A stretch of DNA of 64,000 bases from Vitrella brassicaformis CCMP3155. Lineage: Eukaryota > Protista > Chromerida. Position 1 is the first letter of the stretch. Each line of letters opens with the position of its first letter. A program made the translations under genes and the position numbers. Location: contig CDMY01000260.1 of assembly GCA_001179505.1 (NCBI GenBank), positions 81,763 through 145,762 on the forward strand. The letters run 5' to 3'. Under the pieces are notes generated by a model. That model did not search any database. It was not told the origin of the DNA and worked only from the letters and a program-made list of their open reading frames with translations. Shown one piece after another: positions 42,861 through 45,054 of this stretch.

Positions 42861-45054
42861 TCAGAAGTCTGGTTGGAAGATGGCATCCAAGTCGTGCAGT
42901 TTCTTCACCAACGGCACCATTGATTTGCTGCAGCAGATAACGACACGACAGATAAACAATGAGTTGCTGTAGCGCGTGTGGGATCAGCTTATCAAACTTA
43001 CTCGTATGACCCGTCTGATGTCACCAAGAAGACCGGCTTCTGACCTTGAGTCTTTTCCAGCGTCTCCACGAAGTCGCCATCCTTCAGTGCACAGGAAATG
43101 GAGAACGATCGCATCACAGATTGCCATAGATAAACGAATGTGTGCAACATACCCCAGCCACGAAGACCACCGCTGCGATCTCGGGGTCGTCGGCCATCTC
43201 TTTCAGCTTGTCAGCGATTGCGATGTCAGCACCCTTCTGTTGACGATTTGACTTCAGCCTACACGGAAGAGGGGGCAGGTGCGTCTGTTCTCTCGCCATG
43301 ATGTGTGTGCCGCATCTCACATACTTGGCCTCATGGATTTTCGCCATGTGTTCAATGCCCTTGTGGAAGTTCTTGAGAGCTTTCTGGGCTGCCATGGTGC
43401 TCATGTCGTCGGGCCGTGTGCTCACCACATAGGTGCTGTTGGGGGTGATCTCATACTGAGGCCATTTGTAGCCGAAGCAGCTGATTAGGTACTGGAAGCC
43501 CTCGGGCGTCATGGAACGTTCCGTGAGGGCAACATGCCTTTTGTCCAGGAAGGCCGAGTCGATGATCACGGCAGCAGCTCCTCGACTGCACACACACACA
43601 TTACTCACCTTACTCGCTCTCTCTGCCTGGCAGTCATGGAACCTGTTCATGGTCGTTGCTGGGGGTCCGTTCAGAGGTGGTGGAGACACACGACCCGGCG
43701 TGGGTGTGGGTGCGGTAGGTGTGGCTGTGCGGGGCGGCGTGCCAGCGGAAGGCAGTCGCCCTTGGTACTGCTTCTTGATCGCCTCTAGCTCCCTGAGGCA
43801 CTTAGCTACGGCATCCGGCTGGTCTGTAGTGTTATCACACAGAACGGAAGGGACATGTGCCTGTCGTGGCCTTCGTGTGTCTCTATCTATATGGGCTGAC
43901 CTTTGACTTTGATAATTGTGCTGTTGTCGTTTCGGTGGGGGATAGAAATGTCAATCACATCTGACACATAAGCGTTTTCAGCACAAGGGGCATGTGTTTG
44001 GTTCATCCGGCCTTCCAGTGATGTGCGTACCCCGTCCGCCGCATCGATCGCGCAGGGCCGTGACGGTCGAGCCGCCCTTGCCGATGTAAAGACCAGCCAC
44101 GTCCTGCACTCATACACCATACGCACAAGAGAGGCGCGTGTGTACGTGCTCCGCCGGTTCCGTGTCTGTGTGTGTGTGTGCGTGTGTGTGCATGGGTATC
44201 TCACCGATGCCTCCATGTCGAACGTGGTCTCGATCTCATTCCCGCGCAATTGCTGTGGCCGACCAGAGCAGCTGCCACTACCGAGATCTGACCACACACA
44301 CAGAGAGGGAGAGAGAGAGGGGAAACGCAGCGGACACACCACACACAGAGGCGTCAGTCACACACGAGGGATGCTCAGTGGCTCACCATTGGGTGCCGTG
44401 AATGGGAGTCTGGGCGGATTGTCGTCCTTTGCAGAGCTCCTGCACGCGGCAACCAGGCACGACACACACCGCAGTCAGTGGCTGTCCCTCGCACCGATGC
44501 CGATCTCACCTGGTTGCTTGTGGTGGCCGACATACCTCAGGATGGTCCCTGCATACCAAGTGCACAAGTGGATTGTATCGTGAAGTAATCGACCATTCGT
44601 CTCTGCCATACCGCAAGTAGTCGAGTTCCTCCTGAGTATGTGCAGCGTGGCAACCGTCGCCATGGCGGCATTTGCCTCTCGGTTTCAACGAATGAGGTGT
44701 GGTCAATGTGGCACTATAGTGCCGTTCTGTGGCGTACCTTGTTTGTGGAACTTGCACCACTCCGGTATGCGCTGCCGCAGATCCTGCCGTCCATGAGCGA
44801 ACGGACAGCGATCGCCTCGCTCGCACAGTGCCCTGCGCAGCCACTTTTGGCAGAGCTTGGTCTTGAAGTTCTGGGCTGTGCTCTCTGTGTTCTCGTTAGT
44901 TGATCTGACCAACACACACACACACACACAAAGACACAGACCACACACACACGCATTCGTGCGTGTGTGCACACTTATTGCCATCATCGCACCGCGTATC
45001 GCTATCTCCATCGTCCGTTGAGCTGTCCAAGGAGAAAGGGGTACCCGCCGGCAT
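42861..45054 (-). CDS. 2xCCCH zinc finger - KH - Pro-rich linker - NYN (LabA/DUF88-type PIN) ribonuclease, ~460 aa
   Basis: Frame-consistent GT-AG model. FKTKLC-x8-C-x5-C-x3-H; C-x7-C-x5-C-x3-H; KH ETTFDMEAS|DVAGLYIGKGGSTVTALRDRCGGR|DVIDISIP...IIKVK|DQPDAVAKCLREL; NYN VIIDSAF, QKGADIAIA, VFVAG|DGDFV, KPVFLV, KSMVPLVKKLHDL. Confidence 0.85.

What the first reader, a model, noticed from the sequence alone, without database searches (positions are those of the whole stretch)
42861..45054. Single-chain 2xCCCH-KH-NYN ribonuclease: candidate novel RNA-surveillance effector
Seen: a fully frame-consistent spliced gene with two tandem CCCH fingers (the first with a TIS11-like FKTKL lead-in), a KH domain with an intact GKGG loop split over four exons (invisible in the ORF track), a Pro-rich linker, and a NYN domain retaining acidic catalytic motifs (IIDS, KGAD, GDGDF). 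Known: CCCH fingers and KH bind ssRNA; LabA/DUF88 NYN domains are PIN-fold RNases; in animals ZAP (CCCH sensor) works with KHNYN/N4BP1 (KH + Regnase-type PIN). Inference: a convergent all-in-one sensor-nuclease for mRNA decay or antiviral/anti-transposon defence. I do not recognise this architecture from any described protein.
Basis: partly seen in the sequence, partly recalled or inferred. Interest (0 to 1): 0.85.

Follow-up and report, generated by a model that had tools for sequence, protein, structure and literature searches.

The report
Zinc-finger, KH and NYN nuclease gene
This is a real, transcribed gene of the alga Vitrella brassicaformis that joins two RNA-binding zinc fingers and a KH domain to a LabA/MARF1-type NYN nuclease; it probably cuts RNA, is already in public databases but unstudied, and most of its assembled transcripts keep an intron that breaks the full-length reading frame.

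Summary
On the minus strand, 45054..42861, lies V. brassicaformis gene CEL98007.1 (UniProt A0A0G4EM06, 431 aa). Pfam finds zf-CCCH, KH_1 and NYN, all above their curated cut-offs.

- a wrong exon 1 donor;
- a missed 39-nt exon;
- a 57-nt intron read through.

Spliced RNA contigs from four runs carry all exons on one transcript. However, intron 2, which lies inside finger 2, is retained in the main contig of three runs. The productive junction appears in only one run. Its acceptor is a weak GAG, where the paralogue has CAG.

The NYN model (pLDDT 86.5) matches LabA-like 2QIP (Z 18.4) and MARF1 NYN (Z 17.1). It does not match the Regnase/KHNYN-type PIN (Z 7.4). D270, D359, D384 and D386 are invariant in the family.

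An exhaustive HMMER search of 1.84 billion representatives found relatives only among Vitrella paralogues, plus one prokaryotic NYN protein. Most of the paralogues combine CCCH fingers with NYN. Only this gene and one recent duplicate carry the KH domain.

Best reading: an RNA-guided endoribonuclease, built by domain shuffling in a lineage-specific CCCH-NYN family. It is analogous to, not homologous with, Regnase and KHNYN. A defence role is unsupported. The scan had already noted the CCCH-NYN family on another piece of this genome (s1-201664).

The parts
45055..45173 (-). 5' UTR, at least this far, with no upstream ATG
   Evidence: RNA contigs reach 45173. No ATG occurs in these 119 nt.
44993..45054 (-). 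Exon 1: the ATG and an acidic N-terminus (aa 1-21)
Evidence: The contig piece starts at 44993. P0004 maps here.
44738..44904 (-). Exon 2: CCCH finger 1 (44852..44793, FKTKL lead-in) and the first Cys of finger 2
   Evidence: Pfam zf-CCCH scores 35.7 bits on this exon alone. TTP tandem-finger structure 1M9O matches at E 3.7e-08. dN/dS in this frame is 0.15, against 1.0 in the frame used by the MMETSP ORF.
44676..44737 (-). Intron 2 (62 nt, not a multiple of 3), lying inside finger 2. It has a weak GAG acceptor and is often retained.
   Evidence: It is retained in the main contig of X1, X7 and X8. In X2 it is spliced in one contig (depth 13.7) and retained in another (depth 33.1). The acceptor is GAG here and CAG in the paralogue. 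The retained form gives the 87-aa product P0005.
44612..44675 (-). Exon 3: the rest of finger 2 (C79, C85, H89). An alternative acceptor lies after 44632.
   Evidence: P0004 maps here. MMETSP proteins P0001 and P0007 imply the CAG acceptor 44 nt downstream, which shifts the frame.
44510..44548 (-).
   Evidence: Joints 44547/44611 and 44438/44509, each with cut +1. The exon is present in P0004 and P0003.
44387..44439 (-). Exon 5 of the true model: linker
43759..44237 (-). KH domain (aa ~146-222, GKGG at 164-167). It is spread over four exons: 44287-44205, 44103-44031, 43960-43901 and 43823 onward.
   Evidence: Pfam KH_1 scores 23.0 bits for P0004 and 29.9 for P0003. Phmmer hits against solved structures: Nova-1 KH at E 1.8e-05 and FBP1 KH at E 1.3e-04, aligned across the GKGG core.
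43643..43758 (-). Pro/Thr-rich linker (aa ~223-260)
   Evidence: Seen directly in the sequence. pLDDT is below 50 here.
43586..43642 (-).
   Evidence: Joint 43585/43643 in all four runs. The stretch is absent from P0004.
42861..43585 (-). NYN nuclease domain (aa ~262-431) in four exons (43585-43325, 43258-43153, 43081-43002, 42927-42861), ending at the stop codon
   Evidence: Pfam NYN scores 28.4 bits. The AF2 model has pLDDT 86.5. Foldseek matches 2QIP at E 3.6e-08 and MARF1 at 2.8e-06. VIA-align gives Z 18.4 and 17.1. D270, D359, D384 and D386 are invariant.
41239..41962 (-). Partial second copy (P0002, CEL98006.1: the C-terminal half of NYN) abutting a 300-N gap at 41963-42262
   Evidence: tblastn and self-blastn. 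Positions 41551-41962 are 100% identical to the paralogue contig L001 7721-8132, which also ends at a gap.

Best explanation
The stretch is Vitrella brassicaformis gene CEL98007.1. Its productive mRNA has 13 exons and encodes a 431-aa cytosolic or nuclear protein. From N to C terminus it carries an acidic N-terminus, a TTP-like tandem CCCH pair, a type-I KH domain, a Pro-rich linker and a LabA/MARF1-type NYN (PIN-like) nuclease domain.

Inferred mechanism: the zinc fingers and the KH domain bind single-stranded RNA and hold the transcript at the exposed NYN active site. That site is formed by D270, D359, D384 and D386, with an acidic residue after strand 2. It would cut the RNA endonucleolytically in a Mg2+- or Mn2+-dependent reaction, and the fragments would then be degraded. 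In other words, this is a targeted mRNA-decay or RNA-processing enzyme.

The gene belongs to a family of CCCH-NYN genes found here only in Vitrella. In this gene and its recent duplicate CEM27946.1, the KH domain sits where two larger paralogues carry a second zinc-finger pair.

Output of full-length protein is limited by poor removal of intron 2, which has a GAG acceptor and lies inside finger 2. Retention or use of an alternative acceptor gives an 86-87-aa product that ends inside finger 2.

Shown: the gene structure, transcription, domain identities, fold, residue conservation and family distribution. Inferred: RNA binding, nuclease activity, biological role and any regulatory meaning of the intron retention.
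For: - Gene and protein.
- One transcript carrying all exons, with every intron except intron 2 cleanly spliced.
- Domains above the Pfam cut-offs.
- The tandem fingers align to TTP (E 3.7e-08) and TIS11d.
- The KH region aligns to Nova-1 and FBP1 KH domains.
- NYN fold: pLDDT 86.5 and pTM 0.83; 2QIP and MARF1 are the top matches, well clear of the rest; the family profile hits 2QIP at E 2.6e-09.
- The four MARF1 aspartates lie at the ends of strands 1, 2 and 4 and at the start of helix 3, and each is needed for Mg/Mn-dependent ssRNA cleavage (PMC6217404). In the model, D270 ends strand 1, D359 starts the helix after strand 3, and D384/D386 follow strand 4. All are invariant in 8 sequences.
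- Purifying selection against the duplicate: dN/dS is 0.43 overall and 0.12 on the tandem fingers, and essentially all indels lie in introns or the UTR, the only clear coding one being a one-codon, in-frame difference.
- Family membership and shared intron positions, including the intron inside finger 2.
Against: - No biochemical data exist for this protein or for any member of its family.
- The acidic residue after strand 2 (MARF1 D215 equivalent) is not fixed in position across the paralogues.
- The KH region folded with low confidence (pLDDT below 50), and its Pfam score is only just above the cut-off.
- Finger 2 is C-x7, lacks the lead-in, and sits 12 rather than 18 residues from finger 1, so TTP-like ARE specificity cannot be assumed.
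- Most assembled transcripts are unproductive for the full protein, so the fusion protein may be scarce.
- Exons and introns of the two duplicates differ about equally (~5%), so the selection tests rest on few substitutions.
Confidence: 0.6

Rival explanations
1. This copy is a decaying duplicate. The C-to-G change at the intron 2 acceptor has largely disabled productive splicing, so the locus mainly makes nonsense transcripts or an 87-aa finger peptide. Under this reading the function resides in the paralogue, which keeps a CAG acceptor, or in the other CCCH-NYN genes.
For: The acceptor is GAG here and CAG in the paralogue. Intron 2 is retained in the main contigs of X1, X7 and X8, and at higher depth than the spliced form in X2. 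All three MMETSP transcript assemblies are unproductive (P0001, P0005-P0007). dN/dS of 0.43 is only moderate.
Against: All 13 exons are open, and coding exons show at most a one-codon, in-frame indel against the paralogue. The productive junction does occur in X2. The tandem-finger frame shows dN/dS of 0.12. The transcripts found in MMETSP are of this copy, not of the paralogue. Contigs cannot measure isoform ratios.
Confidence: 0.2
2. Retention of intron 2 is regulated. Under this reading it is a poison or detained intron, possibly part of a feedback loop of the nuclease on its own mRNA. The short finger-only product, or a KH-NYN product started at a later ATG of the alternative-acceptor form, would then have a function of its own.
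For: Only intron 2 of the twelve introns is retained. The intron position inside finger 2 is conserved across distant paralogues. The alternative-acceptor mRNA has a 402-aa ORF from the second ATG that carries KH-NYN without fingers.
Against: The weak acceptor is specific to this copy, which points to a defect rather than a design. Paralogue P0017 is assembled fully spliced in MMETSP. No condition-dependent data exist. The 62-aa leader of the 402-aa ORF is out-of-frame sequence with dN/dS of 1.0.
Confidence: 0.1
3. The NYN domain does not work as an RNase. Under this reading it acts on single-stranded DNA, or serves only as a binding or scaffold module.
For: Most PF01936 proteins are uncharacterised (PMC5499597). 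FBP- and hnRNP K-type KH domains are known to bind ssDNA as well (my own knowledge, not tested here). The second acidic position varies.
Against: Three acidic positions and the GDxDF motif are invariant across eight sequences. MARF1, the only biochemically characterised protein among the close structural matches, is an ssRNA nuclease. Fusion to CCCH fingers points to RNA.
Confidence: 0.1

Closest known systems
MARF1 (mammals) and DNE1 (Arabidopsis): PF01936 NYN endoribonucleases fused to RNA-binding domains
   Same: Same nuclease family and fold (mouse MARF1 NYN Z 17.1, rmsd 2.5 over 145 residues). The aspartates sit at the equivalent structural positions. The design is the same, with a nuclease that relies on attached RNA-binding modules.
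   Different: In those proteins the partner domains are RRM and LOTUS/OST-HTH; here they are CCCH fingers and a KH domain. Sequence identity is only ~12%, and the family profile does not reach MARF1 by sequence. The nearest sequence relatives outside Vitrella are prokaryotic LabA-like proteins.
LabA-like NYN proteins (COG1432; Vibrio VPA0982, PDB 2QIP)
   Same: The best structural match (Z 18.4) and the only PDB match by sequence profile (E 2.6e-09, with a shared GDGDF motif).
   Different: These are bacterial proteins, single-domain or fused to OST-HTH, with no CCCH or KH. Their biochemical function is largely unknown.
Regnase-1/ZC3H12A-D (PIN + CCCH) and KHNYN/N4BP1 (KH + PIN), with ZAP as the CCCH sensor
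   Same: The same functional logic: a PIN-like endonuclease steered by CCCH and/or KH modules to single-stranded RNA (PMC6615859, PMC11670115 and PMC12709174, listed).
   Different: A different nuclease family (PF11977). ZC3H12C scores only Z 7.4, and Pfam lists no such match at E 0.1 or better. The domain order differs, with the RNA-binding modules N-terminal here. The likeness is convergent, not homologous.
Tristetraprolin/TIS11 tandem zinc-finger family
   Same: Finger 1 has the C-x8-C-x5-C-x3-H spacing and a (F/Y)KT(K/E)L lead-in. Both fingers align to TTP at E 3.7e-08.
   Different: Finger 2 is C-x7 and has no lead-in. The spacing between fingers is 12 residues rather than 18. Several aromatic RNA-stacking positions are replaced. 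TTP proteins recruit deadenylases rather than carrying a nuclease.

Membership tests
NYN domain, Pfam PF01936 (LabA/MARF1 type) | Profile score above the curated cut-off | tested here: met
   28.4 bits against 24.2 for P0004; the paralogues score 30-40 bits. The match covers only profile positions 56-117 of 145, so the N-terminal half is divergent.
NYN domain, Pfam PF01936 (LabA/MARF1 type) | Alpha/beta/alpha PIN-like fold of the 2QIP/MARF1 type | tested here: met
   The model has pLDDT 86.5. 2QIP scores Z 18.4 and MARF1 Z 17.1, and the next unrelated chains score about 9. Foldseek probability is 1.00.
NYN domain, Pfam PF01936 (LabA/MARF1 type) | Four conserved acidic residues forming the metal site | tested here: inconclusive
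   D270, D359 and D384/D386 are invariant and sit at the positions described for MARF1 D178, D246 and D272. The strand 2 position (D215 equivalent) has D320/D321 nearby in this protein but is not fixed across the paralogues. The mapping goes by secondary-structure position, not by a residue-level superposition.
NYN domain, Pfam PF01936 (LabA/MARF1 type) | Metal-dependent ribonuclease activity | not testable with these tools
   Needs a biochemical assay.
Regnase/ZC3H12-KHNYN-N4BP1 PIN domain (PF11977) | Profile match and closest fold | tested here: not met
   Pfam lists no PF11977 match at E 0.1 or better. The ZC3H12C PIN-CCCH structure scores only Z 7.4, within the background range.
TTP/TIS11 tandem zinc-finger family | Two C-x8-C-x5-C-x3-H fingers, each with an (R/K)YKTEL lead-in, 18 residues apart | tested here: not met
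   Finger 1 fits. Finger 2 is C-x7 without a lead-in, and the spacing is 12 residues (sequence of P0004; alignment). It is TTP-like, not a member.
Type-I KH domain (PF00013) | GXXG loop and a profile score above the cut-off | tested here: met
   GKGG at 164-167. Scores are 23.0 bits against a cut-off of 21.5 for P0004, and 29.9 for P0003. Nova-1 and FBP1 KH structures match at E 1.8e-05 and 1.3e-04.
Type-I KH domain (PF00013) | Beta-alpha-alpha-beta-beta-alpha fold | tested here: inconclusive
   The full-length AF2 model has pLDDT 22-45 over residues 101-259, because only two sequences cover the region. Its secondary structure is compatible but not reliable.

The most novel reading that the evidence does not exclude
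Vitrella evolved its own family of single-chain RNA-surveillance nucleases, with CCCH fingers, and in one branch a KH domain, wired directly to a bacterial-type LabA NYN nuclease. On this reading the family acts against viral or transposon RNA and does in one polypeptide what ZAP plus KHNYN do in vertebrates. Dosage of this copy would be controlled by a poison intron inside the second finger.
Probability: 0.1. Interest if true: 0.65.

Novelty: new variant of a known kind. Interest (0 to 1): 0.4.

Why it matters
Nucleases of the PIN/NYN superfamily have repeatedly been made specific by fusion to RNA-binding modules, as in Regnase, KHNYN/N4BP1, MARF1 and DNE1. This gene shows the same solution assembled independently in a chromerid alga, a free-living relative of apicomplexan parasites. 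The parts are different: a LabA-type NYN domain whose nearest sequence relatives outside Vitrella are prokaryotic, a TTP-like finger pair and a KH domain.

The family has at least seven loci with shared intron positions, and was found here only in Vitrella. It offers a compact set for asking how the RNA-binding modules set the specificity of a NYN nuclease. It would also give a function to the poorly characterised LabA branch. The interest is evolutionary and biochemical. Nothing here ties the gene to defence or opens a long-standing question.

Tried and rejected
The annotated protein and the RNA joints corrected it.
- Pfam on the intron-containing ORF 43950-43117 missed NYN altogether. The domain scores only on the spliced protein.
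- Word-indexed homologue searches found nothing useful outside Vitrella, whether run with the ORF, the full protein or a profile. They even missed known paralogues, so I do not count them as evidence of absence. The exhaustive HMMER search is the basis for the distribution claim, and it used a single sequence rather than a profile.
- The full-length AF2 model is unusable outside the NYN domain.
- PADLOC gave no hit for P0004, and only generic LabA-like NYN hits for paralogue P0017.
- The ESM Atlas feature search gave only a sub-threshold NYN cluster at 0.82.
- The viral-contig scan returned only generic phage NYN cores at about 30% identity, which is not informative.
- I considered recent horizontal transfer of the whole gene and set it aside, because the paralogues share several intron positions.
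- I considered organelle targeting and set it aside on the acidic N-terminus alone. No predictor was run.

Full report
**What is there**

The window has about 58% G+C, short GT-AG introns and CA/TG microsatellites. A 278-aa open stretch of the minus strand found two proteins of Vitrella brassicaformis. Cluster look-up then showed that the window's own gene is CEL98007.1, UniProt A0A0G4EM06. It is 431 aa and is automatically named 'C3H1-type domain-containing protein' (P0004).

- the exon 1 donor is at 44993, not 44975;
- a 39-nt exon at 44548-44510 was missed;
- a 57-nt in-frame intron at 43642-43586 was read through.

The true gene has 13 coding exons.

**Domains**

Pfam on P0004 scores all three domains above their curated cut-offs:

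| Domain | Score (bits) | Cut-off (bits) |
|---|---|---|
| zf-CCCH | 34.4 | 20.5 |
| KH_1 | 23.0 | 21.5 |
| NYN (PF01936) | 28.4 | 24.2 |

- **Fingers.** Finger 1 is C39-x8-C48-x5-C54-x3-H58 with an FKTKL lead-in. Finger 2 is C71-x7-C79-x5-C85-x3-H89. Both align to the TTP tandem finger (1M9O, E 3.7e-08) and to TIS11d. The spacing between fingers is 12 residues rather than 18, and finger 2 has no lead-in.
- **KH.** The KH region (GKGG at 164-167) matches solved KH domains of Nova-1 (E 1.8e-05) and FBP1 (E 1.3e-04) across the GXXG core. Its AF2 model is unreliable because only two sequences cover it.
- **NYN.** Folded with eight family sequences, the NYN domain gave pLDDT 86.5 and pTM 0.83. Foldseek ranks LabA-like 2QIP (E 3.6e-08) and the human and mouse MARF1 NYN domains first. 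An independent all-against-all alignment gives Z 18.4 for 2QIP and 17.1 for MARF1. Everything else scores 9 or below, including Rae1/YacP (7.9) and the ZC3H12C PIN-CCCH structure (7.4). The family profile hits 2QIP by sequence at E 2.6e-09. The nuclease is therefore of the LabA/MARF1 type, not the Regnase/KHNYN type.

**Active site**

In mouse MARF1, four aspartates are each required for Mg2+/Mn2+-dependent ssRNA cleavage. They lie at the ends of strands 1, 2 and 4 and at the start of helix 3 (PMC6217404).

In the model here, D270 ends strand 1, D359 starts the helix after strand 3, and D384/D386 follow strand 4. These residues, together with K350, G357, G383 and F387, are invariant in eight family sequences. 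The strand 2 acidic position is occupied nearby by D320/D321 in this protein but is not fixed across the paralogues. I infer an active metal-dependent nuclease. This was not tested.

**Transcripts**

Contigs of four public runs from three studies are spliced. In three of the runs (X1, X7, X8) a single record carries the 5' UTR, the finger exons, the KH exons and the NYN exons. In X2 the assembly branches at intron 2, so the same exons lie on separate records. All introns are removed except intron 2 (44737-44676, 62 nt), which lies inside finger 2.
- It is retained in the main contig of X1, X7 and X8.
- In X2 both forms exist, with the spliced form at depth 13.7 and the retained form at 33.1.
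- Contig depths are not quantitative.

The MMETSP transcriptome tells the same story. One assembly retains the intron (P0005, 87 aa, plus P0006). Two assemblies use a CAG acceptor 44 nt downstream, which shifts the frame (P0007, 86 aa; P0001, 402 aa read from the second ATG in a non-finger frame).

The productive acceptor is GAG, the least favoured type, whereas all the other introns end in CAG, TAG or AAG. The paralogue has CAG at this site. Predicted products of the three mRNA forms are 431 aa, 87 aa, and 86 or 402 aa.

**Is the finger frame real?**

- Against the paralogous gene (L001), exons and introns are both about 95% identical. Essentially all indels fall in introns or the UTR, and the only clear coding one is a one-codon, in-frame difference in the linker exon.
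- dN/dS is 0.43 overall and 0.12 over the tandem fingers. For exon 2 alone it is 0.15 in the finger frame, against 1.0 in the frame used by the MMETSP ORF. The substitution counts are small.
- Distant paralogues conserve finger 2 and have an intron at exactly the same place inside it.

The annotated in-frame junction is therefore the ancestral, selected one.

**Family and distribution**

An exhaustive phmmer search with the NYN part, against 1.84 billion representatives, found eight proteins. All but one are from V. brassicaformis:

| Protein | Accession | Architecture |
|---|---|---|
| P0016 | CEM24643 | four CCCH + NYN |
| P0017 | CEL99873 | four CCCH + NYN |
| P0018 | CEL99885 | one CCCH + NYN |
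| P0010 | CEM31360 | degenerate fingers + NYN |
| P0013 | CEM09120 | NYN only |

The list also includes the partial neighbour P0002. The exception, P0015, lies on a 1.15-Mb metagenome contig with compact prokaryote-type genes.

Only P0004 and its recent duplicate P0003 (CEM27946) carry a KH domain. It sits where P0016 and P0017 have a second finger pair. The ESM Atlas neighbours of the NYN model are bacterial NYN or NYN + OST-HTH clusters. I found no paper on such a protein. An earlier follow-up in this scan reached the same view of three CCCH-NYN genes on another piece of the genome.

**Interpretation**

The most likely function is a targeted endoribonuclease. The fingers and the KH domain bind single-stranded RNA and present it to the NYN site. 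This parallels MARF1 (NYN + RRM + LOTUS), DNE1, Regnase (PIN + CCCH) and KHNYN/N4BP1 (KH + PIN). The parallel with the last two is convergent, because the nuclease families differ.

No evidence found here bears on a defence role. The frequent failure to remove intron 2 may be a defect of this copy (my preferred rival) or may be regulation.

The protein is already in public databases but uncharacterised, and the architecture is a new combination of known parts. I rate it a new variant of a known kind, of moderate interest.

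Noticed in passing
window 41551-41962 and 41963-42262; L001 7721-8432: The partial NYN copy left of the 300-N gap is 100% identical over 412 nt to the 3' part of the paralogue on contig CDMY01000646, which also stops at a 300-N gap. Sequence beyond the two gaps is only about 74% alike. This is probably an assembly problem, so the number and arrangement of KH-bearing copies remain uncertain. In addition, 42263-43001 repeats at 40638-41372 at 99% identity.
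   Followed up: partly
window 45249-46794 and 46151-49553; L001 67-1375, 5394-5757 and 9927-14128: Both KH-NYN loci are flanked by related sequence (66-85% identity) that includes a TLD-domain gene, but in a different relative position and orientation. A third fragment of it lies at window 39269-39889. The duplication unit is larger than the nuclease gene.
   Followed up: partly
L003 (P0017, contig CDMY01000291): The two finger pairs of P0017 have identical intron positions: inside finger 2 at 125/126 and 311/312, and after 'EAWR' at 147/148 and 333/334. This points to an internal tandem duplication of a block of about five exons.
   Followed up: partly
window 45268-45300: RNA contigs of three runs start at 45268, preceded by letters that do not match the window (AAGAAACGATCACATC...). 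This is probably a spliced exon of the divergent neighbour gene.
   Followed up: no
L005-L039 (IMG/VR contigs): Many phage contigs of 25-47 kb encode a LabA-type NYN core with the GDxDF motif, at about 30% identity to the Vitrella domain over about 60 residues.
   Followed up: no
L002 4001-4873: The nearest non-Vitrella relative of the NYN domain (P0015, 290 aa, with a close homologue P0019) sits in a prokaryote-type gene neighbourhood (DsrE, aminoacyl-tRNA synthetase, response regulator). This hints at a bacterial origin of the Vitrella NYN branch.
   Followed up: no
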